35,261 nucleotides of DNA from Octopus bimaculoides (Eukaryota). The position numbers and the translations under genes were made by a program. Shown here one piece after another: positions 3,960-35,261 of this stretch. The stretch is from contig NC_068981.1 in assembly GCF_001194135.2 (NCBI RefSeq), positions 3,118,805 to 3,154,065 on the forward strand, given 5' to 3'. Numbering within the stretch: the first letter of the stretch is position 1; each line of letters opens with the position of its first letter. The notes under the pieces are model-generated. The model was not told the origin of the DNA, did not search any database, and worked only from the letters and a program-made list of their open reading frames with translations.

Positions 3960-4265
3960 ACATCATCCTTTAATGCATGTTTTCCATGCTGGCATGGGTT
4001 GGACGGTTTGACAGGGAGCTGGCCAGCTGGAAACTTGCACCAGGTTCCTGTCTGATTCAGCTTGGTTTCTATGGCTATCTGCCTTTCCTAACACCAACCA
4101 CTTTACAGAGTATGTTGGGTACTTCTCATGTGGCCTGGCATGGGTGCTTTTTACATAGCACCACACAGGGTTCTTGCAATGCAAAAGCCCCTTCAGCTGG
4201 AAGAGGGCATTAACAATTTTGCTGTGGTGGATGGGTCTTCTTGAGTACAGCAATGCACCAAGTAT
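3960..4265 (-). repeat. RTE-type 3' tail copy
   Basis: Same tail motifs (CCATGCTGGCATGGGTTGGACGG, CCTTTCCTAACACCAACC). Confidence 0.65.
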
Positions 4266-5296: not shown

Positions 5297-5645
5297 AATA
5301 ATAATGAATTTATTGTGTACAGTGCTCAGTTGCACTATAGCTCATCAGAAAAAGGAAATCAAAACTGCATGAACAGTTACATAGAATAATGTACAGAAAG
5401 CGAACAGTGAATGAATTGTTTAAAAAGGTGTATTGTTGGCGAATGGAAGTTTTGAAGGAAGTAGTATTTTGACAGCTAACAACTGATGCATTTAGTTTAT
5501 TCCATGCTTCAGCAATTCTGAGCTTGAAAAAATGTTTCTGAACTCCAAAGTCATGCCTTCAACTTTTTTTTTCAAATATCTACAAAGAATAAATGAAAGA
5601 TTTAGCTGAAATCACACATGTTCATCGCGTATTGGATGGTCCATT
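5297..5645 (-). mobile_element. CR1/L2-clade LINE 3' end
   Basis: Minus translation SNTR*...QKHFFKLRIAEAWNKLNASVVSCQNTTSFK resembles the CR1 ORF2 C-terminal motif (TRGH...FF..R....WN.LP..VV.....FK); ends in (ATT)n. Confidence 0.7.
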
Positions 5646-6005
5646 TCTATAAATTTTGTTATTAAAAATTAGTTTATGTAAAATTAGTTGGTGATGAAGT
5701 TTATTTCAAAATCATGATTTTGAAATAATCCAATACATTATGAGCATGTGTGATTTCAACTAAATCTTTCATTTATTCTTTGTACGTGTGATTACTTTCT
5801 GCATAAGCTTGCACAATAACAAAATGCATGTTTAATATAATTTCACATACACATGTGCATGCATGTATGTGCATGTATGCGCATGAATGCTTTCATGCAA
5901 TACACTTCATCAGATATTTTATATTCAGTGTTTAGTTAGATAAACATTCCACTGTTATATCCTGTTGCATTGTAACTGTATTATTCAAGTAGGAATAGGC
6001 TAGAC

Positions 6006-7380: not shown

Positions 7381-8060
7381 CATCATCATCATCGTTTAAT
7401 GTCCGCTTTCCATGCTAGCATGGGTTGGACGATTTGACTGAGGACTGGTGAACCAGATGGCTGCACCAGGCTCCAATCTGATTTGGCAGAGTTTCTACAG
7501 CTGGATGCCCTTCCTAACGCCAACCACTCCGTGAGTGCAATGGGTGCTTTTAAGTGCCACCAGCACGAGTGCCAGTCAGGCAGTACTGGCAACGGCCACG
7601 CTCGAATGTTTTTTTCAGTGCTATATAATATCCAGTTACCATTATGAACTTGGTTGATAGGATTGACTGAAAGGGATCTATAATATTGTATATATAATAG
7701 TAGCATAATACTGATTCGATGTATATTATTTCATATATTCATCATCATCATCATAGTTTAACATCCGCTTTCCATACTGGCATGGGTTGGATGGATTGAC
7801 AGGAGCTGGCCAGCCAGGAAGCTATCCAGACTCTAATTTCTATTGTGGTATGGTTTCTACAGCTGGATACCCTTCCTAATGCCAACTACTCAACAGTGTG
7901 CTGGGTGCTTTTTATGTGCCACCAGCATAGGAGCATTTACACAGCACTGGCACAAGAGCATTTTATGTGGCACCGGCACCTGTAAAAGACAAGCCTGTAT
8001 GTATGGATCACTGATTTTCTTGGCTTGATGCATTTTCTCAAGTACAGCAAATCACCATTG
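7381..8060 (-). repeat. Two adjacent RTE-type 3' tail copies (7381-7605, 7738-8060)
   Basis: Both begin with (CAT)n and contain CTGGATGCCCTTCCTAA. Confidence 0.75.
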
Positions 8061-12039: not shown

Positions 12040-12246
12040 ACACCTGACTGGCTCTTATGCTGGTGGCACGTAAAAGCACCCACTACACTCTTGAAGTGAT
12101 TGGCGTTAGAAAGGGCATCCAGCTGTAGAAACTTTGCCAGATCAAATTGGGGCCTCATGCAGCCTCTGGCTCACCAGTCCTCAGTCAAACCGTCCAACCC
12201 ATGCCAGCATGGAAAGCAGACGTTAAACGATGATGATGATGATGAT
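12040..12246 (+). repeat. RTE-type 3' tail copy
   Basis: GGCACGTAAAAGCACC...GAAGGGCATCCAGCTGTAGAAAC...(GAT)n. Confidence 0.75.
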
Positions 12247-13089
12247 AATTATTATCATCACTTCATATTTGCTTCCCAAGCTGGTATGGGTTGGATAGGT
12301 CACCACAGTCCAAGTCAGTTCTTATCTACAATTACTGCCCTTCCAGATGGGTCAAAGTACCACATCTTGCTTGCATATTTCACATTGGCTTGGAATCAAC
12401 AACTGGGTGCCCTTCCTAACACCAATCCTTTTATGGAGTATGCCAAGTGTCTGTTATCCTGGAAACGGCACTAGCGAGATCATTTCCTTAACTACACAAG
12501 TTTAAAAGGTCCTCTCAACAATTTTAAGGAGTTATTGATGTGAATTTTAGTGTGGTACCAGCTGTAGTGAAGTTGTCAAGTATCCCACAAGAGAAAAGCA
12601 TACAATACTGGTCAATACTCTTACTGTTTGTTCTGAAGAATGTGATTGCTAGAGTTGGTAGAATAGATAGAATTTACAGAAAATAAGCTGGGGTAAAGTA
12701 TTAAAAGATGCCCAAGTATAAAAGGGGCAAATAGTGGCTGGGATGACATTACGAAAGGAAAAGTAGAAAAAATTAGAGTGTTGCCGGCTTGCATACAAAA
12801 AGCATGGAATGATGGAATGTTTGCTGTGAGGAAAAGTACAAGTGATAGGTAGTCCTCATAGCAATGGTAAGAGAATGATGGCAGTGAAGGAGTGCATTGG
12901 ATGCTAACAGATCTGATGCAATTGTTTGTTATTGTTACTCTTACATGGGTGACACACTGCAGTGAACAGGGGTTGGCATATGAGAGGAGCAGTAGATAGA
13001 GACTGAGGAAGTATAAAATGAACAAACGCCCAGAAGTTTGCATCATCATGATATATATATATATCGTTTAATCGTTTAACGTCCGCTTT

Positions 13090-13124
<35 letters not shown>

Positions 13125-14017
13125 NNNNNNNNNNNNNNNNNNNNNNNNNNNNNNNNNNNNNNNNNNNNNNNNNNNNNNNNNNNNNNNNNNNNNNNNNNNN
13201 NNNNNNNNNNNNNNNNNNNNNNNNNNNNNNNNNNNNNNNNNNNNNNNNNNNNNNNNNNNNNNNNNNNNNNNNNNNNNNNNNNNNNNNNNNNNNNNNNNNN
13301 NNNNNNNNNNNNNNNNNNNNNNNNNNNNNNNNNNNNNNNNNNNNNNNNNNNNNNNNNNNNNNNNNNNNNNNNNNNNNNNNNNNNNNNNNNNNNNNNNNNN
13401 NNNNNNNNNNNNNNNNNNNNNNNNNNNNNNNNNNNNNNNNNNNNNNNNNNNNNNNNNNNNNNNNNNNNNNNNNNNNNNNNNNNNNNNNNNNNNNNNNNNN
13501 NNNNNNNNNNNNNNNNNNNNNNNNNNNNNNNNNNNNNNNNNNNNNNNNNNNNNNNNNNNNNNNNNNNNNNNNNNNNNNNNNNNNNNNNNNNNNNNNNNNN
13601 NNNNNNNNNNNNNNNNNNNNNNNNNNNNNNNNNNNNNNNNNNNNNNNNNNNNNNNNNNNNNNNNNNNNNNNNNNNNNNNNNNNNNNNNNNNNNNNNNNNN
13701 NNNNNNNNNNNNNNNNNNNNNNNNNNNNNNNNNNNNNNNNNNNNNNNNNNNNNNNNNNNNNNNNNNNNNNNNNNNNNNNNNNNNNNNNNNNNNNNNNNNN
13801 NNNNNNNNNNNNNNNNNNNNNNNNNNNNNNNNNNNNNNNNNNNNNNNNNNNNNNNNNNNNNNNNNNNNNNNNNNNNNNNNNNNNNNNNNNNNNNNNNNNN
13901 NNNNNNNNNNNNNNNNNNNNNNNNNNNNNNNNNNNNNNNNNNNNNNNNNNNNNNNNNNNNNNNNNNNNNNNNNNNNNNNNNNNNNNNNNNNNNNNNNNNN
14001 NNNNNNNNNNNNNNNNN
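13125..14017. other. Assembly gap (893 N)
   Basis: N run bounded by a (TA)n microsatellite on the left and a repeat on the right. Confidence 1.
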
Positions 14018-15182
14018 GAGCGTGACCATTGCCAGTACAGCCTGACTGGCCTTGTAGGGTTTTCGAGCGAGATCGTTGCCAGTGCCCCTGGACTGGCTCT
14101 TGTGCGGGTGGCACATAAAAGACACCATTTCGAGCGTGGCCGTTTTCGTGCGGGTGACACGTAAAAGCACCCACTACACTCTGAGTGGTTGGCATTAGGA
14201 AGGGCATCCAGCTGTAGAAACTCTGCCAAATTAGATTGGAGCCTGGTGTTGCCATCCGGTTTCACCAGTCCTCAGTCAAATCGTCCAACCCATGCTAGCA
14301 TGGAAAGCGGATGTTAAACGATGATGATGATGATATATACACACACACATATATATGTAATGATTACATTGTTCAATTAAATGGAACCACTTGAAACAGA
14401 TGTACAGCATTATTACTTGACATCTTCTGTAGTTGAGGCTGATGCCAGTGTCACGTAACTGGCCTGCTAAAAGCACTGTTCAATCATTGGGTGATATGCT
14501 GTGTTTGCGAAAACCTGCTGAACTGAGTGAAATTGTAGTAGTGGCCAATGCCAGTGCCGTCTGATTGGCACCCATGCCGGTGGCATGTAAAAAGCACCAT
14601 TTGAGTGTTGGGCCTCATGGAGGGCAGGTGACCAAGACCCTTGGCAATATACCATGCTTGTGTTCATCTATCAAGCCAAGTGAGATTGTAGTCATGGCTG
14701 ATGCCGGTATCAGGTCAATGGCACCTGTGCCAGTGGCATGTAAAAAGCACCCACTACACACTCGGAGTTGTTGGCATTAGGAAGGGCATCCAGCCATAGA
14801 AACCTTGCCAAATGAGATTGAAACCTGGTGCAGCCCCCCCCCCCCAGCTTACAAGTTTTTAGTCAAACTGTCCAACCCATGCCAAGCATGAAAAGTGGAC
14901 ATTAAACAATGATGATGATGATGATTCACACACACACACACACAACAGAATTGATAACCAAAGTGTCACATAAAAAGCATTTGTGCTGGTGCCATGTAAA
15001 AGGCACTAGTGATGGTGCCATGTGAAAAGCACCCAGTACACTGTAAAGAGGTTGGCATTAGGAAGGGCATCCAGTCATAGAAACTAAGTGAAAAACAGAC
15101 TATGTGGGCCCTGGGCTTGCCAACTCCTGTCAAACTATCCAACCCATACCAGCATGGAAAACAGACATTAAATGGTGATGAT
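14018..15182 (+). repeat. Cluster of three RTE-type 3' UTR copies
   Basis: Copies end in (GAT)n at about 14333, 14925 and 15182. Confidence 0.75.
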
Positions 15183-17957: not shown

Positions 17958-18346
17958 TCATCATCATCATCGTTTAACGTCCGCTTTCCATGCTAGCATG
18001 GGTTGGACGATTTGACTGAGGACTGGTGAAACCGGATGGCAACACCAGGCTCCAATCTAAATTTGGCAGAGTTTCTACAGCTGGATGCCCTTCCTAACGC
18101 CAACCACTCAGAGAGTGTAGTAGGTGCTTTTACGTGTCACCTGCACGAAGGCCAGTCAGGCGATACTGGCAACGGCCACGCTCGAAATGGTGTCTTTTAT
18201 GTGCCACCCGCACAAGCCAGTCCAGGGGCACTGGCAACGTTCTCGCTCGAAAATCCTACGGAAGCCAGTCAGACGGTACTGGCAATGGCCACGCTCAAAA
18301 TAGTGCATCTTATGTGCCACCCGCACAAGAGCCAGTCCTGGGGCAC
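17958..18346 (-). repeat. Young RTE-type 3' UTR copy with internal 114-bp tandem unit
   Basis: Near-identical (reverse complement) to 14018-14333 and 34916-35261; units start at 18147 and 18261. Confidence 0.85.
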
Positions 18347-18596
18347 ATATATATATATATTCCACACACACACACTTATGTACATATATCTCGGAGTTGT
18401 TGGCATTAGGAAGGGCACCCAGTCATAGAAACTATGCCAAATCAGACTGGTGCAGCCCCTCAGCTTACCAGCTCTGGTCAAACTGTCCAACCCATGCTAG
18501 CTTGGAGAACAAATGCTAAATGATGAGGATGATGATATGTGTGTGTGTGACACCACACACATATATATATAATATATATATATGCAAACATGTGTA

Positions 18597-22770: not shown

Positions 22771-25588
<2,818 letters not shown>

Positions 25589-28027: not shown

Positions 28028-28099
28028 GTCGACATATTTGAATATACCGGTATGTCTTATTGTGTCGACATATTTGAATATACCGGTATGTCTTATTGT
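28028..28099. repeat. Perfect 36-bp tandem duplication
   Basis: GTCGACATATTTGAATATACCGGTATGTCTTATTGT x2. Confidence 0.95.
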
Positions 28100-29704
28100 C
28101 TTAGTGATTTTCATTTGAATTACTCTCGATTAATAATTAAAATAACATTTTCGAAAGATTTTGAGTGAAAAAATTAACCCTATACACTGCTTACAGTCAA
28201 ATAGGGTTAACGGGTTCGAGGAGGGACTTGATTATTTATATCGATTTGAGCGGAATTTGAACTCGGTTCGCAACCAAATGCAAGATTGTTGATTTCTATG
28301 GAAACCCAGTGGTTAAAAACCACTAGGTTTCCATAGAAGAGACTCTTCATACTGTCGCTCGACTTGCCGGCTAATTGTAACCAAATTCGCTCATCACATC
28401 GTCTTGTCTTTTACAGTGGGCATATCTGTTGGAACTGACCTTGGGTTAAACAACTCGATTTTAATAGCTTTCGCTCATACCAATAAAAATCTCATCTTCG
28501 CAATACATCTGGTTCACTTCGTTTCCTTTAGAAAAATAACCGAAAGGTGATATGATTGGGGGAATGGGAATTCAGATTCGTAAAGATAGAGTAACATAGT
28601 ATTTTAAAACATGTACGTCTTTTCCAATGAAGAGTTAAGACGAATACGACGTGAAATGTTTAAAACCAGAAGCCGAAATTTTATTTGGTGGTTTAATCTT
28701 TACTTAACGTAGAATATCGGGTATTAATTTCGTTTGGCGACTGCGGAAGAATTTGCTTTTTCGACGCCGTGCTACGATCAGTCTACTTTGCTTAGGAGAT
28801 TATTTGATATTCATCCCCGTTTTTAAGCCCAGATTTTCTCTTAAAACGGTCTTCACCTATTTTTTTATGTATTTTATCTCAATTTCTCTTTTTCTTTTTA
28901 TTCTTTTAGTGGGTTTGTGGTTTAGTTGTAAATTTTTTGTTTGCATAGGTGGAAGCATGGCTGTGTGGTTAAGAAGCACGCTTCACAACAGCGTGGTTTT
29001 GGGTTCAGTTCCAACACGGCACCTTTCGCAAGTCTTCTTTTTTTTTAACCTCGGACCGACCAATTCCTTGTGAATTTAGTTGACAGAATCTATGAAAACC
29101 TGTCACCTCCACCCACTGCTTGACAATCTGTGTTTATATTCCCGTAAGAGCTGATTGAAGTGAGTGGATTTAATAGACTGGAACAGAGATACACCCAAGG
29201 CGCTGCTGTGTGGTAAGAAGCTGGCCGCTGTCAAATGACTGAAACAAAAGAAAATCGTTTAACGTCTCCCTTTTATGCATGCATATGTAGGATGTTTGAC
29301 AGGAGCTGGCCAAGTAGAAGACTACCCCCAGGCTACTGTGCCTATTTTGGCAGGGTTTTTACGGCTGGATGCCCTTCCTAACACCAGCCAGTGGCCTGAG
29401 TTCTTTTTATATGACACCAGCACAGGCGAGGTCAGTTTGGCATGGTTGTTACAGCTGGATGCCCTTCCAAATGCCAACCACTTAGGTGTGGACTGGCTGC
29501 TTTTTACTTGGGGACCCTGCAGCAACACCAGTAGCGTCACCAAATAGCCTGTAAGACAAGGAATTTTGAGAGGGCAGGGGGCATTGGAGAGGCAGAAACA
29601 GGTATTGTGGTACATGGTTCCCTGACCAGAGAGAGAGAGGTACAAGAAAGAGGACAAACAGTTGAGCTGATGTAAAGGAGATATTTGGCTACCTAGTTAC
29701 ATGT

Positions 29705-30491: not shown

Positions 30492-30972
30492 ATAGTAAAA
30501 TATTTAGAAATAATATATTTCTAAATCTCTAGCAGAATTATGCAGTAGATACAATGAAGTAGTTGTATGCTGTCAACTTAATGTGACAATCCCCTGAAGG
30601 GAATAATACTACTGTTGGTTAGACCTAGGAAGCTGCACCGCTTCCTGTCGGCCTTGACACATTTCCTGTGTCTTTATGTTCACAAGGAGGAGACAAGCAC
30701 CTCCGCCCAGCTAAGCCTGCATCCAGAGACATGTTTCTGAGTCTTTGCTACTCCACACTGAGGACGAGCAAAGACTCAGAAACATGTCTCTGGATGCAGG
30801 CTTAGCTGGGCGGAGGTGCTTGTCTCCTCCTTGTGAACATAAGGACACAGGAAATGTGTCAAGGCCGACAGGAAGCGGTGCAGCTTCCTAGGTCTAACCA
30901 ACAGTAGTATTATTCCCTTCAGGGGACTGTCACATTAAGTTGACAGCATACAACTACTTCATAGTAAAATAT
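30492..30972. mobile_element. Inverted-duplicate Penelope-like insertion with hammerhead motif and 12-bp TSD
   Basis: Arms 30554-30749 and 30767-30962 (196 bp, 2 mismatches) around a 17-nt spacer. Direct repeat ATAGTAAAATAT at 30492-30503 and 30961-30972. The left copy has an extra ~50-nt tail. Hammerhead core on + at 30752-30794. Confidence 0.7.
30752..30794 (+). ncRNA. Minimal type-I hammerhead ribozyme motif (degenerate)
   Basis: Stem I TCCACA/TCTGGA (one C-C mismatch), core CTGAGGA, stem II GAG-caaaga-CTC (C/A mismatch at its base), GAAA, palindromic stem III ACATGT, cleavage triplet GTC. Confidence 0.65.
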
Positions 30973-32018
30973 ATATTTTATATATTCTTATATCATCATT
31001 CTTTGGCATCTGTTGACCAGGGCTGGAAGGCTGCACCAGACTCCAGTCTGATTTGGCATGGTTTTCTACGGTTGGATGCTCTTCCTAATGCCAACCACTC
31101 TGAGAGTGTAATGGGTGCTTTTACATGCCACTGGCACGGGTGCCATTTGTGTGACACCAGTATCTGCCACGACTTAGATTTTACTTGGTTTGATGGGGTA
31201 TAAGTGTCTTCTTAAGCTTTACTTCTTTTTTTCTTTTTCATAAAAGAATTTAACTTGCTGCCCTGAATTTCTCATGGCTGTGTTTATAATCTTTGTTTTT
31301 TGCTTAAGGTAAAATAAGGCATGTTTCAATAAAAAAGAAATTAAAACAGAAATTTAAGATAATGATGTTTAATGACCTAATTTTCAGCATTTGTTTTGCT
31401 TGCTACTCCAGTCATAAAATTTCTTTTCTGTAAACTTTTAAGATTTTTTTACTTCTCAAAATGAGTTGGCAATTACTTTTACATAATAAAAGAGAAATAA
31501 TAATGGCTCTTAACCTACTGTTAGCATATATTTGTTTCCCTTAGTCACAATTTCATTTATTAATATGTAATTACTTCTACATGAGAAATGACAAAAATCT
31601 GTAATAATGATGTTTGATATTTAAGTATATATTTGTGTCACTTAGTCACAACTTTATTAATAAAATCAATTTCTCTTCTATAACTTATGAAATATTTCTG
31701 TTTGCTTTTCAAAATAATTCGGAAATTTATAATTACTTTTACATGCGAAATGAAAAGCAAATCTATAATAATTGAGGAGTGAACTGATACTCCCACACAT
31801 GACTGTCAGTGGAGTGGATGAGTCTTATAAATGGATGATCCAGTAGACAGTTGAGGTTGAACTCTGAGAGCATTAGTCTTATTGTTTCTATCGCAGTATT
31901 GGATTGCTTAACGTTTATAAGATAACCAACTCTTGTCACATTTCTTATTGTTATCCGGTTATATTTGGTACTGTGATATATTGTTATACACATCATATGT
32001 TATCACTGACAAAATAAC

Positions 32019-32517
32019 AATAATGATGTTACAGTTCTATATTTAAGAGATGAGGAATTATGCACATTATTTACATTATTTACATTTGACGGATATTTGT
32101 CCTCATCTTGTTTGTTGTTAACACAACGTTTCAGCTGATATACCTTTCATCAGGTGTCTTGGGGAAATTCCAAACCTGGGTTCTCATTCCTAAGGTATTT
32201 TTCGATGTTATTATTATTATTGTTGTTATTATTATTGTTCATGTCACTGCTTGGAATCGAACTTGGAATCTTGAGGTTAGTAGCCCGCACTCTTAACCAC
32301 TACGCCATATGCCCAAGCAGTGACCTGAACAATAATAATAATAATAATCATAATAATTATAATAATAATAACATCGAAAAATACCATAGGAATGAGAATC
32401 CAAGTTCGAAATTTCCCCAAGACACCTGATGAAGGCTGGAGGGTATATCAGCTGAAACGTTGTGTTAACAACAAACAAGATGAGGACAAATATTCATCAA
32501 ATGTAAATAATGATGTT
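32019..32517 (-). mobile_element. tRNA-headed SINE-like element with hammerhead tail, plus an inverted 5'-truncated copy; 12-bp TSD
   Basis: Minus copy 32031-32314 has A box TGGCGTAGTGG (32297-32307), B box GTTCGATTCC (32253-32262), an (AAT)n linker and a tail. Plus copy 32313-32505 lacks the head. AATAATGATGTT is duplicated at 32019-32030 and 32506-32517. Confidence 0.8.
32421..32466 (+). ncRNA. Minimal type-I hammerhead ribozyme motif
   Basis: Stem I GACAC/GTGTT, core CTGATGA(+A), stem II GGCTG-gagggtatat-CAGCT, GAAA, palindromic stem III ACGT, triplet GTT. The inverted copy at 32120-32158 has a 7-nt deletion in stem II. Confidence 0.7.
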
Positions 32518-34220: not shown

Positions 34221-34839
34221 CCAACCTCTATGTACATAATGCTTGTATTATGTGCAGTGTCACCTTGACAAGCAAAGAACACAAAAAACACTTAACATCT
34301 TGGAAGTAGGTGTTTGGATCAATATGTTGGTTGAAACTTAATGCTATTCATATAATGTAAACAGCTGGGAGAGAAATTAGTGAAATAGGATTCATTAACA
34401 CTTCCAATGTAACACATGTATGTGTGTGTGTGTGCGTGTGTGTGTGTATGTATGTGTGTGTGTGTATGTATATATATATGGAGTAGTTGGCATTAGGAAG
34501 GGTATCCAGTTATAGAAAACCATGCCAAATTAGACTGGATCTTGGTGCAGCCTTCCAACGTGCCAACCCAGTCAAGCCATCCATCCCATGCCAGCATGGA
34601 CAACTGACATTAAATGATGATGATGTATATATATATATATATATGTATCCAATTTCTTAAAATTGGGTACATTTTAATTTTTCTTTTATATGTTTCGGTT
34701 TTTGAAAAACCTTATCAAAAATATGTACTAAAATGGAATATGTAAAGAGAAAAGAACTATTAATAAAATTAAATTCAAATTAAGATTAACATTCATAGTT
34801 TACTTTCCTTTTCCTGCAAGAGCACGTGATAATATCCGT

Positions 34840-35261
34840 TAGTTCTGGTGGCATGACAAGTTCAACTGACTGTGACCACAAATTACTACTATCATGCGTG
34901 AGAAGACCCGGCAAGCCAAGTAAGATTGTTGCCAGTGCCCCTGGACTGGCTCTTGTGCGGGTGGCACATGAGATGCACCATTTTGAGCGTGGCCGTTGCC
35001 AGTACCGCCTGACTGGCTCCCGTAGGATTTTCGAGCGAGATCGTTGCCAGTGCCCCTGGACTGGCTTGTGCGGGTGGCACATAAAAGACACCATTTCAAG
35101 CGTGGCCGTTTTCGTGAGGGTAACACGTAAAAGCACCCACTACACTCTCTGAGTGGTTGGCGTTAGGAAGGGCATCCAGCTGTAGAAACTCTGCCAAATT
35201 AGATTGGAGCCTGGTGTTGCCATCCGGTTTCACCAGTCCTCAGTCAAATCGTCCAACCCAT
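34840..35261 (+). mobile_element. RTE ORF end plus 3' UTR with tandem modules
   Basis: GAGAAGACCCGGCAAGCCAAGTAA (EKTRQAK*), similar to the AAGAAGACC ORF end near 16415, followed by the shared tail. Truncated by the window edge. Confidence 0.75.

What the first reader, a model, noticed from the sequence alone, without database searches (positions are those of the whole stretch)
30492..30972. 196-bp near-perfect palindrome that looks like a ribozyme-bearing Penelope-type insertion rather than a MITE
Seen: arms differ at only 2 of 196 positions. The 17-nt spacer is not random, because it supplies stem I and the CTGAGGA core of a hammerhead whose remainder is in the right arm. The left copy extends ~50 nt beyond the mirrored region to a 12-bp direct repeat (ATAGTAAAATAT) that recurs at the right end. 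Inference: a recent insertion of a pLTR-derived RNA, reverse-transcribed from both ends of the target break.
Basis: partly seen in the sequence, partly recalled or inferred. Interest (0 to 1): 0.85.

Follow-up and report, generated by a model that had tools for sequence, protein, structure and literature searches.

The report
Penelope-type inverted retroelement insertion
The palindrome is real and is best read as a short non-coding retroelement, inserted as two head-to-head copies in the way Penelope-like elements insert; a second, older insertion 1.1 kb away has the same layout and a clearer hammerhead-ribozyme motif, so this is a known kind of mobile DNA, not a new system.

Summary
- Arms 30554-30749 and 30767-30962 (196 nt) differ at 2 positions.
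- The spacer is 17 nt.
- A 12-nt direct repeat, ATAGTAAAATAT, flanks the whole.
- About 50 nt next to the left repeat have no partner on the right.

A second palindrome at 32019-32517 has the same layout. It has a 12-nt direct repeat, a one-sided tail of about 50 nt and head-to-head copies. The two tails share the 10-mer GAATTATGCA.

This layout matches published Penelope-like element (PLE) insertions: an inverted 5'-truncated copy, a tail at one end only, a variable target duplication and an AT-rich target. Neither insert has terminal inverted repeats at the ends set by its direct repeat, so neither looks like a MITE.

The second element has exact pol III A and B boxes. It also has a minimal hammerhead that passes a descriptor written from the literature (0.002 expected per window).

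The focal hammerhead is weaker. It passes only a relaxed descriptor, has a 3-bp helix II, an extra A before GAAA and a helix I mismatch, and folds poorly.

No other copies, no partner PLE and no empty site could be obtained.

Verdict: the PLE-type insertion is well supported, the focal ribozyme is probably a decayed motif, and a pLTR origin is not shown.

The parts
30492..30503 (.). Left copy of the 12-nt target-site duplication ATAGTAAAATAT
   Evidence: The chance of an 11-mer or longer repeat in this geometry is 0.0036.
30504..30553 (-). One-sided 'tail': the 3' extension of the left copy, absent from the right copy. It holds the 10-mer GAATTATGCA (30535-30544) shared with the tail of the second palindrome, and a terminal 9-bp hairpin.
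30554..30749 (-). Left arm: an inverted copy of the element (sense on the - strand, 5' end at the centre)
   Evidence: 194 of 196 positions complementary to the right arm.
30750..30766 (+). 17-nt unique spacer, ACTCCACACTGAGGACG. Read on the + strand it gives the helix I 5' strand, the CUGAGGA core and the first base or bases of helix II.
   Evidence: Which copy it belongs to is inferred, not shown.
30767..30962 (+). Right arm: the tail-less copy (sense on the + strand). It ends at the right target duplication, overlapping it by 2 nt.
30752..30794 (+). Hammerhead-like motif, with the predicted cut between 30788 and 30789. Helix I is 30752-57 with 30789-94 (5 of 6 pairs). The core is 30758-64. 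Helix II is GAG/CUC, 30766-68 with 30775-77. There is an extra A at 30778. GAAA is 30779-82. The palindromic CAUG is 30783-86. UC is 30787-88.
   Evidence: It passes only the relaxed descriptor and fails the a-priori one. Rfam is silent. It folds poorly.
30961..30972 (.). Right copy of the 12-nt target-site duplication
32019..32030 (.). Second palindrome: left copy of its 12-nt target duplication AATAATGATGTT
32031..32073 (-). Second palindrome: one-sided tail of 43-50 nt, depending on how a 7-nt overlap is assigned. It holds GAATTATGCA at 32055-32064.
32074..32254 (-). Second palindrome: left arm (body of the tail-bearing copy)
   Evidence: 172 matches, 9 mismatches and 19 gap columns against the right arm.
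32253..32307 (-). Second palindrome: unique centre holding exact pol III A and B boxes (TGGCGTAGTGG, 33 nt, AGTTCGATTCC). This is the tRNA-derived head of the left copy.
   Evidence: the only match in the window, and none in 100 shuffles. ARAGORN and Rfam call no tRNA here.
32313..32512 (+). Second palindrome: right arm, the tail-less copy, lacking the tRNA-like head
32421..32466 (+). Second palindrome: minimal type-I hammerhead, GACAC / CUGAUGA / A / GGCUG-(10 nt)-CAGCU / GAAA / CG / UU | GUGUU. The left copy carries a 7-nt deletion in helix II.
   Evidence: the only hit to the a-priori descriptor, 0.002 expected per window. In one search helices I and II appear in the MFE structure. One search shows the deletion.
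32506..32517 (.). Second palindrome: right copy of its target duplication

Best explanation
The 481-bp feature is one insertion of a short, non-coding, non-autonomous retroelement, made by the integration machinery of a Penelope-like element.

Shown:
- A 12-bp staggered break in an AT-rich target was duplicated.
- Two copies of the same sequence sit head to head, with their 3' ends outward.
- Only the left copy carries about 50 extra 3' nucleotides (the tail).
- The insert ends carry no terminal inverted repeats.

Inferred from published PLE biochemistry:
- The element's RT/EN nicked both target strands and primed cDNA synthesis from both.
- One cDNA started at the distal RNA site and so carries the tail.
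- The other started at a proximal site about 50 nt upstream and so lacks it.
- The two cDNAs ran toward the RNA 5' end and were joined at the centre, leaving 17 unique nucleotides.

Hammerhead. The centre and right arm carry a hammerhead-like motif of the minimal PLE type. I read it as a decayed or atypical relic that marks the element's ancestry. It is probably not an active ribozyme in this copy.

Age and present effect. The insertion is comparatively young: the arms are 99% alike, against 95% for the neighbouring insertion of the same type. Today the locus is most likely inert DNA. Any transcript crossing it would fold into a 196-bp hairpin.
For: Geometry and chance levels.

The second palindrome (32019-32517) has the same layout:
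- a 12-nt direct repeat, a one-sided tail and head-to-head copies;
- a tail sharing an exact 10-mer with the focal tail, at a similar offset from the arm boundary. These are the only two exact copies in the window. The chance of sharing a 10-mer is 0.005-0.012, or 0.003 with the offset constraint.

Hammerhead scans:
- The relaxed descriptor hits only these two elements in 35 kb on both strands, against 0.0067 expected.
- The a-priori descriptor hits only the second element, against 0.002 expected.

Literature:
- PLE insertions are 5'-truncated, often have an adjacent inverted 5'-truncated copy, and carry a 30-40 bp tail often at one end only. [quoted passage not shown] Target duplications vary in length (PMC8557442).
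- A purified PLE protein cleaves and extends both strands, prefers AT-rich sites and starts reverse transcription at two adjacent internal sites, with the tail lying between them (PMC11167929).
- Pairs of minimal hammerheads 100-700 bp apart on opposite strands have been reported in PLE-rich genomes (PMC4209133).

Against a MITE: the insert ends match at 12 of 30 and 9 of 30 positions, which is no TIR. A true TA-flanked MITE at 5579-5786 shows the contrasting layout.
Against: - No other copy of the element, no autonomous PLE and no RT or GIY-YIG domain was found. Family membership therefore rests on layout and a short motif.
- The tails are about 50 nt, longer than the 30-40 bp reported.
- Apart from the 10-mer, the two elements share no significant similarity.
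- The focal hammerhead fails the a-priori descriptor.
- The focal hammerhead fold is outcompeted by a CUGAG/CUCAG helix.
- No Rfam model detects the focal hammerhead. This counts for little, because Rfam also misses the good motif in the second element.
- In the second palindrome the unique centre belongs to the tail-bearing copy. If the same held here, CUGAGGA would lie on the antisense strand.
- The empty site was not seen, so the 50-nt tail could in principle be target DNA.
Confidence: 0.6

Rival explanations
1. A LINE-mobilised SINE-type retroposon on the - strand. Its nascent cDNA snapped back, or the RT switched template onto it, at the RNA 5' end. This copied the 5' 196 nt as an inverted repeat before joining the other side of the target. 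The hammerhead-like string is incidental.
For: - The target duplication, the outward 3' ends and the absence of TIRs fit target-primed reverse transcription in general.
- The second palindrome has a pol III tRNA-type head, as classical SINEs do.
- Its junction coincides with a 12-nt self-complementary stretch around that head that could prime snap-back.
- The near-equal 5' ends of the two copies (17 nt apart) are easy to explain from a single molecule.
Against: - Random termination of snap-back synthesis would not leave the same tail of about 50 nt, with a shared 10-mer at a similar offset, in two unrelated elements.
- Neither element ends in poly(A) or a simple repeat.
- Hammerhead motifs in both elements would be a coincidence.
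- One-sided tails and inverted copies are reported as absent from non-LTR TPRT (PMC8557442).
- The focal junction shows no priming microhomology (inspection).
Confidence: 0.15
2. A foldback or MITE-type non-autonomous DNA transposon with about 200-bp inverted repeats and a long target duplication (for example Mutator-like).
For: Long, nearly perfect inverted repeats, small size, an AT-rich target and flanking direct repeats. Another hairpin element lies nearby.
Against: - The ends set by the duplication are not inverted repeats (12 of 30 matches).
- 50 nt on one side only lie between the duplication and the repeat.
- From general knowledge, a 12-bp duplication fits no common TIR superfamily.
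- The genuine MITE in this window (5579-5786) has its TIRs directly against TA.
- The second element carries pol III boxes and a hammerhead, which are features of retroelements.
Confidence: 0.07
3. A local inverted duplication from replication or repair, or an assembly artefact of a draft genome.
For: The window is a draft with an 893-N gap. PLE-type structures are known to trouble short-read assemblies (PMC8557442). No second copy of the sequence was found anywhere.
Against: - A precise 12-nt duplication flanks the whole structure (p about 0.004).
- The two arm differences and the asymmetric tail are not what chimeric reads produce.
- The second palindrome has the same layout but 9 substitutions and several indels between its arms, so the pattern is biological and recurrent.
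Confidence: 0.06
4. A functional hairpin-RNA locus (a source of siRNA or an ADAR substrate) kept for its 196-bp stem.
For: A near-perfect 196-bp stem. Rfam hairpin models (miRNA precursors, SRP) score it only because it is a hairpin.
Against: There is no evidence of transcription or conservation. The flanking duplication and tail mark it as a recent insertion. The older neighbouring palindrome is decaying, with 95% identity and indels, which argues against selection on such stems.
Confidence: 0.04

Closest known systems
Penelope-like element insertions (inverted 5'-truncated copy plus one-sided tail; Evgen'ev & Arkhipova 2005; Craig et al. 2021, PMC8557442; Frangieh et al. 2024, PMC11167929)
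   Same: Head-to-head 5'-truncated copies. An extension present at one end only. A target duplication of a length that varies in the family. An AT-rich target. A hammerhead-type motif upstream of the 3' end.
   Different: No RT/GIY-YIG ORF and no direct pLTR repeat are present. The tail is about 50 nt rather than 30-40 bp. The element is only about 250 nt long, and no autonomous relative was identified.
Minimal hammerhead ribozymes of metazoan PLEs (Cervera & de la Pena 2014, PMC4209133)
   Same: A CUGANGA...GAAA...UH core. One nucleotide after A9. A G-C pair closing helix II in the best reading. A short palindromic insert in place of helix III (ACAUGU). A GUC cut site. Type I topology.
   Different: In the focal motif helix II is 3 bp rather than 6-8. 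There is an extra A between helix II and G12. Helix I has a C.C mismatch at its second pair. The neighbour's motif (32421-32466) fits much better, with a G.U closing helix II.
Metazoan non-LTR retrozymes, and hammerhead-bearing SINE-like repeats such as Schistosoma Sm-alpha (Cervera & de la Pena 2020, PMC7229834; bioRxiv 10.64898/2026.07.22.740005; Sm-alpha recalled from general knowledge)
   Same: Small, non-coding, hammerhead-bearing and presumably dependent on PLEs. The second palindrome combines pol III boxes with a hammerhead, as I recall for Sm-alpha.
   Different: Retrozymes are defined by head-to-tail tandem repeats of about 150-450 bp that yield circular RNAs. Here the copies are inverted, not tandem, and no circular RNA evidence exists.
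MITEs / foldback DNA transposons
   Same: Small size, long inverted repeats, flanking direct repeats.
   Different: The true insert ends are not inverted repeats, the structure is asymmetric by 50 nt, and the duplication is 12 bp.

Membership tests
PLE-type insertion (layout) | An inverted 5'-truncated copy directly adjacent, giving inverted repeats | tested here: met
   Arms of 196 nt, 194 of 196 complementary, with 5' ends 17 nt apart at the centre. The definition is from PMC8557442.
PLE-type insertion (layout) | A short 3' extension (tail, 30-40 bp) present at one end only | tested here: met
   50-52 nt at the left end only. This is somewhat longer than reported. The second palindrome shows the same with 43-50 nt.
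PLE-type insertion (layout) | A target-site duplication of variable length at an AT-rich site | tested here: met
   12-nt repeats at both palindromes, both AT-rich. Chance is 0.0036 each.
PLE-type insertion (layout) | Sequence homology to an autonomous element encoding a PLE RT and GIY-YIG endonuclease, or such an ORF in the insertion | tested here: not met
   - No Pfam domain in open frames of 25.1-35.2 kb.
- No protein-level relative of any of the six frames.
- The source genome and TE libraries were not available, so a partner elsewhere is untested.
PLE-type insertion (layout) | Direct pseudo-LTRs from partial tandem copies | tested here: not met
   No direct repeat of the element in the window. 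The literature allows inverted-only arrangements.
PLE minimal hammerhead | Conserved core CUGANGA ... GAAA ... U-H in type I order | tested here: met
   CUGAGGA at 30758-64, GAAA at 30779-82, UC at 30787-88.
PLE minimal hammerhead | One nucleotide between A9 and 10.1, and a G10.1-C11.1 pair next to the core | tested here: inconclusive
   If C30765 is the extra nucleotide, G30766-C30777 forms, but A30778 then intrudes before G12. Without the extra nucleotide the closing pair is C.A (inspection). The feature list is from PMC4209133.
PLE minimal hammerhead | Helix II of at least 4 bp (typically 6-8) and a contiguous helix I of 4-5 bp | tested here: not met
   Helix II is 3 bp. Helix I is broken at its second pair. 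The motif fails the a-priori descriptor, whereas 32421-32466 passes it.
PLE minimal hammerhead | Palindromic positions 15.2-16.2 / loop 3 | tested here: met
   A-CAUG-U is palindromic in the focal motif, and A-CG-U in the second element.
PLE minimal hammerhead | Self-cleavage activity (as a dimer or with protein) | not testable with these tools
   Only folding could be done. The hammerhead fold is -0.7 kcal/mol against an MFE of -6.2, with z = +0.83.
Rfam hammerhead families | A score against the covariance models | tested here: not met
   - No hit at the gathering threshold.
- No hit at E<=10 on 701 nt or on 61 nt.
- The test is weak, because the better motif at 32421-32466 is also missed.
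MITE / TIR DNA transposon | Terminal inverted repeats directly against the target duplication on both sides | tested here: not met
   The first 30 nt against the reverse complement of the last 30 nt of the insert match at 12 of 30. 50 nt intervene on one side only.
tRNA-derived SINE | Pol III A and B boxes near the 5' end | tested here: not met
   The consensus pattern matches only the second palindrome (32253-32307, - strand), not the focal element.
Metazoan non-LTR retrozyme | Head-to-tail tandem repeats, each with a type I hammerhead | tested here: not met
   No tandem copies. The copies are inverted.

The most novel reading that the evidence does not exclude
Both palindromes are products of a so far undescribed set of PLE-dependent short elements in this animal. 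One of them is a pol III (tRNA-promoter) SINE carrying a minimal hammerhead. Their shared 3' module (around TGCATAATTC) would be the recognition and initiation signal. Their insertions would preserve in vivo the pattern of two start sites and both-strand priming that has so far been shown only in vitro for one lizard PLE.
Probability: 0.3. Interest if true: 0.55.

Novelty: new member of a known kind. Interest (0 to 1): 0.4.

Why it matters
How PLEs integrate is poorly understood, and the only biochemical work is on one reptile element. Two short, independently inserted elements show clean target duplications, a one-sided tail of about 50 nt and head-to-head copies. They are compact natural records of that pathway. 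If their family and partner element can be found, they would let the two-start-site, both-strand model be tested genome-wide in an invertebrate. The pairing of a tRNA-type promoter with a minimal hammerhead in the neighbouring element also bears on how retrozyme-like and SINE-like parasites of PLEs arise. For annotating this locus, the result is plain: it is repeat DNA downstream of a BiP/GRP78 gene, not a gene or a new RNA system.

Tried and rejected
- Rfam at the gathering threshold on the whole window, and at E<=10 on 701, 61, 561 and 64 nt. No hammerhead was found. Hits to miRNA and SRP models only reflect the long hairpin. Rfam also missed the good motif in the second element, so its silence is weak evidence.
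- Looking for other copies:
  - blastn of both elements against the window and against the related-species contigs found only self hits.
  - Protein searches with the 48-aa frame and with all six frames joined found nothing.
  - Exact-pattern scans of metagenome and viral contigs found nothing.
- The empty-site test through the neighbouring BiP gene:
  - The closest exon product is 98% identical, from Logan run SRR11869391, and lies on a 4.3-kb contig.
  - That contig aligns only up to about window position 28,865, some 1.6 kb short of the palindrome.
  - An exact look-up of the 87-aa ORF across the right junction found nothing.
- Global similarity between the two elements or their 3' ends is not above shuffles. 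Only the exact 10-mer stands out.
- Shared structure at the arm/tail boundary: hairpins can be drawn in both elements, but their energies are ordinary.
- tRNA detection by ARAGORN or Rfam in the second palindrome found none. The pol III box consensus does match.
- Snap-back priming at the focal junction: by inspection, the 3' end of either candidate cDNA does not pair next to the first copied base.
- Identifying the organism from the SRA run numbers in the literature gave no hit.

Full report
**1.

- The arms 30554-30749 and 30767-30962 are 196 nt long. They differ at two positions, 30589 (A against G) and 30673 (T against C).
- The spacer 30750-30766 is ACTCCACACTGAGGACG.
- ATAGTAAAATAT occurs at 30492-30503 and again at 30961-30972. 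The second copy overlaps the end of the right arm by 2 nt.
- The 50 nt at 30504-30553 lie between the left repeat and the left arm and have no counterpart on the right.
- A direct repeat of 11 nt or more between flanks placed this way arose in 0.36% of random placements in this window. The repeat is therefore very probably a target-site duplication.

**2. Context**

The window is a draft animal sequence with an 893-N gap at 13125-14017.
- It holds exons of a BiP/GRP78 gene on the + strand. The last exon ends in KDEL at 25588.
- It contains many copies of a SINE-like repeat.
- The palindrome lies 4.9 kb downstream of the BiP stop codon.
- No open frame of 60 aa or more between 25.1 and 35.2 kb matches any Pfam family. 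So no reverse transcriptase or GIY-YIG endonuclease lies nearby.
- The element has no second copy in the window.

**3. The key lead is a second palindrome with the same layout**

A window-wide scan for inverted repeats showed another palindrome 1.1 kb downstream.
- Its arms are 32074-32254 and 32313-32512, with a unique centre of 58 nt.
- The arms show 172 matches, 9 mismatches and 19 gap columns. It is older than the focal one.
- A 12-nt direct repeat, AATAATGATGTT, lies at 32019-32030 and 32506-32517.
- Between the left repeat and the left arm are 43-50 nt with no mirror on the right. The range depends on how a 7-nt overlap is assigned.
- This is the focal layout again, in the same orientation.
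- The two one-sided tails share the exact 10-mer GAATTATGCA (30535-30544 and 32055-32064). These are its only exact occurrences in the window.
- Shuffled or randomly sampled sequences share a 10-mer with the focal tail in 0.5-1.2% of trials, and in 0.3% at a similar offset.
- Beyond this word the two elements are not significantly alike.

**4. Neither element is a MITE**

For both inserts, the ends defined by the duplication are not inverted repeats. They match at 12 of 30 and 9 of 30 positions. By contrast, a genuine small TIR element at 5579-5786 has 57-nt terminal inverted repeats directly against TA on both sides.

**5. What the layout matches**

- Craig et al. 2021 (PMC8557442) describe Penelope-like element insertions as highly 5'-truncated. 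[quoted passage not shown] The target duplication varies in length.
- Frangieh et al. 2024 (PMC11167929) worked with a purified PLE protein. It cleaves and extends both target strands, prefers AT-rich DNA, and starts reverse transcription at two adjacent internal RNA sites. The genomic tail is the stretch between those sites.
- Cervera & de la Pena 2014 (PMC4209133) noted pairs of minimal hammerheads 100-700 bp apart on opposite strands.
- Together these account for every feature here: the two outward-facing copies, a tail on one copy only, the 12-bp duplication and the AT-rich target.

**6. The hammerhead question**

Rfam gives no hammerhead hit at the gathering threshold, at E<=10 on 701 nt or on a 61-nt slice. 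The hits it reports are generic hairpin matches.

I then wrote two descriptors in Python.
It requires at least 5 of 6 pairs in helix I, CUGANGA, at least 3 bp in helix II with 0-1 nt offsets, GAAA, a palindromic insert of 0-8 nt, then U and H.
- It found exactly two hits in the whole window on both strands: the focal motif and 32426-32461, inside the right arm of the second palindrome. Random Markov sequences give 0.0067 hits per window.
- The a-priori descriptor follows the text of Cervera & de la Pena. It requires a contiguous helix I of at least 4 bp, an optional nucleotide after A9, a helix II of at least 4 bp, and a palindromic 15.2/16.2 or loop.
- It found one hit, the second element, against 0.002 expected.

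The second element's motif is GACAC / CUGAUGA / A / GGCUG-10 nt-CAGCU / GAAA / CG / UU | GUGUU.
- Helices I and II appear in its minimum-energy fold, at -11.7 kcal/mol with z = -1.33.
- Rfam misses this motif too. Its silence therefore says little about hammerheads that lack helix III.

The focal motif is weaker.
- In its best reading, C30765 is the extra nucleotide after A9 and G30766-C30777 closes a helix II of only 3 bp.
- A30778 intrudes before G12.
- Helix I has a C.C mismatch at its second pair.
- The hammerhead fold is worth -0.7 kcal/mol, against -6.2 for a competitor that pairs CUGAG of the core with CUCAG (z = +0.83).

It does keep several features typical of PLE hammerheads: the exact core, the nucleotide after A9, a palindromic ACAUGU in place of helix III, and a GUC cut site. 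A better motif sits in the sister insertion. I therefore judge it more likely than not (about 0.6) to be a decayed or atypical descendant of a PLE-type hammerhead. I judge it unlikely (about 0.1-0.15) to cleave.

One caveat concerns strand. The hammerhead reading requires the 17-nt spacer to belong to the right, tail-less copy. In the second palindrome the unique centre belongs to the left, tail-bearing copy.

**7. The second element is a tRNA-promoter SINE with a hammerhead**

- Its centre matches the pol III consensus TGGCNNAGTGG-N33-GTTCGANNCC exactly on the - strand (32253-32307).
- This is the only match in the window, with none in 100 shuffles.
- In sense orientation it reads: tRNA-like head, an AAT-type microsatellite, the hammerhead, then the tail.
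- The hammerhead cut site is about 94 nt from the distal 3' end.
- This is close to the 85-92 nt between the cut site and the RT start site in the lizard PLE, a figure I derived from the positions given.
- The left copy has lost 7 nt of helix II.

**8. Mechanism, with shown and inferred steps separated**

Shown:
- the target duplication;
- two inverted copies with their 3' ends outward;
- the tail on one copy;
- no TIRs and no coding capacity;
- arm identity of 99%, against 95% for the neighbour.

Inferred:
- mobilisation in trans by a PLE RT/EN;
- nicks on both strands 12 bp apart;
- cDNA synthesis from both nicks, started at two RNA sites about 50 nt apart;
- joining of the two cDNAs near the RNA 5' end;
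- the hammerhead as a relic of a pLTR-like ancestor.

Not shown:
- any homology to a PLE;
- an empty site;
- ribozyme activity;
- transcription.

**9. Rivals**

- A LINE-driven SINE with snap-back synthesis explains the palindrome. It also explains the near-equal 5' ends of the two copies. It does not explain the matching tails, the shared word or the hammerheads.
- A foldback transposon fails on the missing TIRs and the asymmetry.
- An artefact or local duplication fails on the precise duplications, and on an older, partly decayed example of the same design.
- A selected hairpin-RNA gene has no support.

**10. What could not be done**

The species is not in the protein collection. The best BiP exon match is 98%, from a Logan assembly whose contig ends 1.6 kb short of the palindrome. 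No copies were found through protein space or in metagenome or viral contigs. The decisive tests remain open: the family census, the partner element, the empty site and cleavage assays.

**11. Verdict**

- A Penelope-type insertion rather than a MITE: yes, on layout and on a second example.
- Ribozyme-bearing: only as a degenerate motif in the focal copy.
- pLTR-derived: not shown.

This is a new member of a known kind and of moderate interest, mostly to people who study PLE integration and hammerhead-bearing repeats.

Noticed in passing
window 32019-32517: A second palindromic insertion with the same layout as the focal one: a 12-nt duplication, a one-sided tail and head-to-head copies. It carries exact pol III A and B boxes at its centre and a minimal hammerhead in its right arm. 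The left copy has a 7-nt deletion in helix II.
   Followed up: yes
window 5579-5786: A small TIR element with 57-nt terminal inverted repeats (91% complementary), directly flanked by TA on both sides and with about 90 nt between the repeats. It looks like a Tc1/mariner-type MITE and serves as a contrast to the two palindromes.
   Followed up: partly
window 22982-23497 and 24842-25588 (+): Exons of a BiP/GRP78 (HSPA5) gene, with the last exon ending in ...DKDEL. The closest product in the collection is 98% identical, from Logan run SRR11869391. Its contig is about 87% identical in DNA over the exon and 3' region and falls to 67-75% further downstream, so it is a related species, not the same one.
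   Followed up: partly
window, e.g. 1-283, 3963-4253, 7389-7706, 12100-12474, 14020-14265, 18036-18428, 29275-29657, 31010-31160, 34786-35152: Many copies, in both orientations, of one SINE-like repeat. Its open frames read ...LQLDALPNANHSE..., and the DNA holds GATGC(C/T)CTTCCTAA(T/C)GCCAACCACTC. One copy directly follows the focal palindrome. The family was not identified. From memory it recalls cephalopod SINEs, but this was not tested.
   Followed up: no
window 13125-14017: A run of 893 N (a scaffold gap), flanked on the left by an (AT)n run at 13092-13124. The assembly is a draft.
   Followed up: no
window 28028-28099: A perfect tandem duplication of a 36-bp unit (GTCGACATATTTGAATATACCGGTATGTCTTATTGT), 2.0 copies at 100% identity.
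   Followed up: no
window 30504-30526 and 32031-32110 (- strand): The focal tail ends in a 9-bp hairpin (UUAGAAAUA-UAU-UAUUUCUAA). In the second element a 9-bp stem (AGAUGAGGA/UCCUCAUCU) brackets the arm/tail boundary and the shared 10-mer. The fold energies are not above shuffles.
   Followed up: partly
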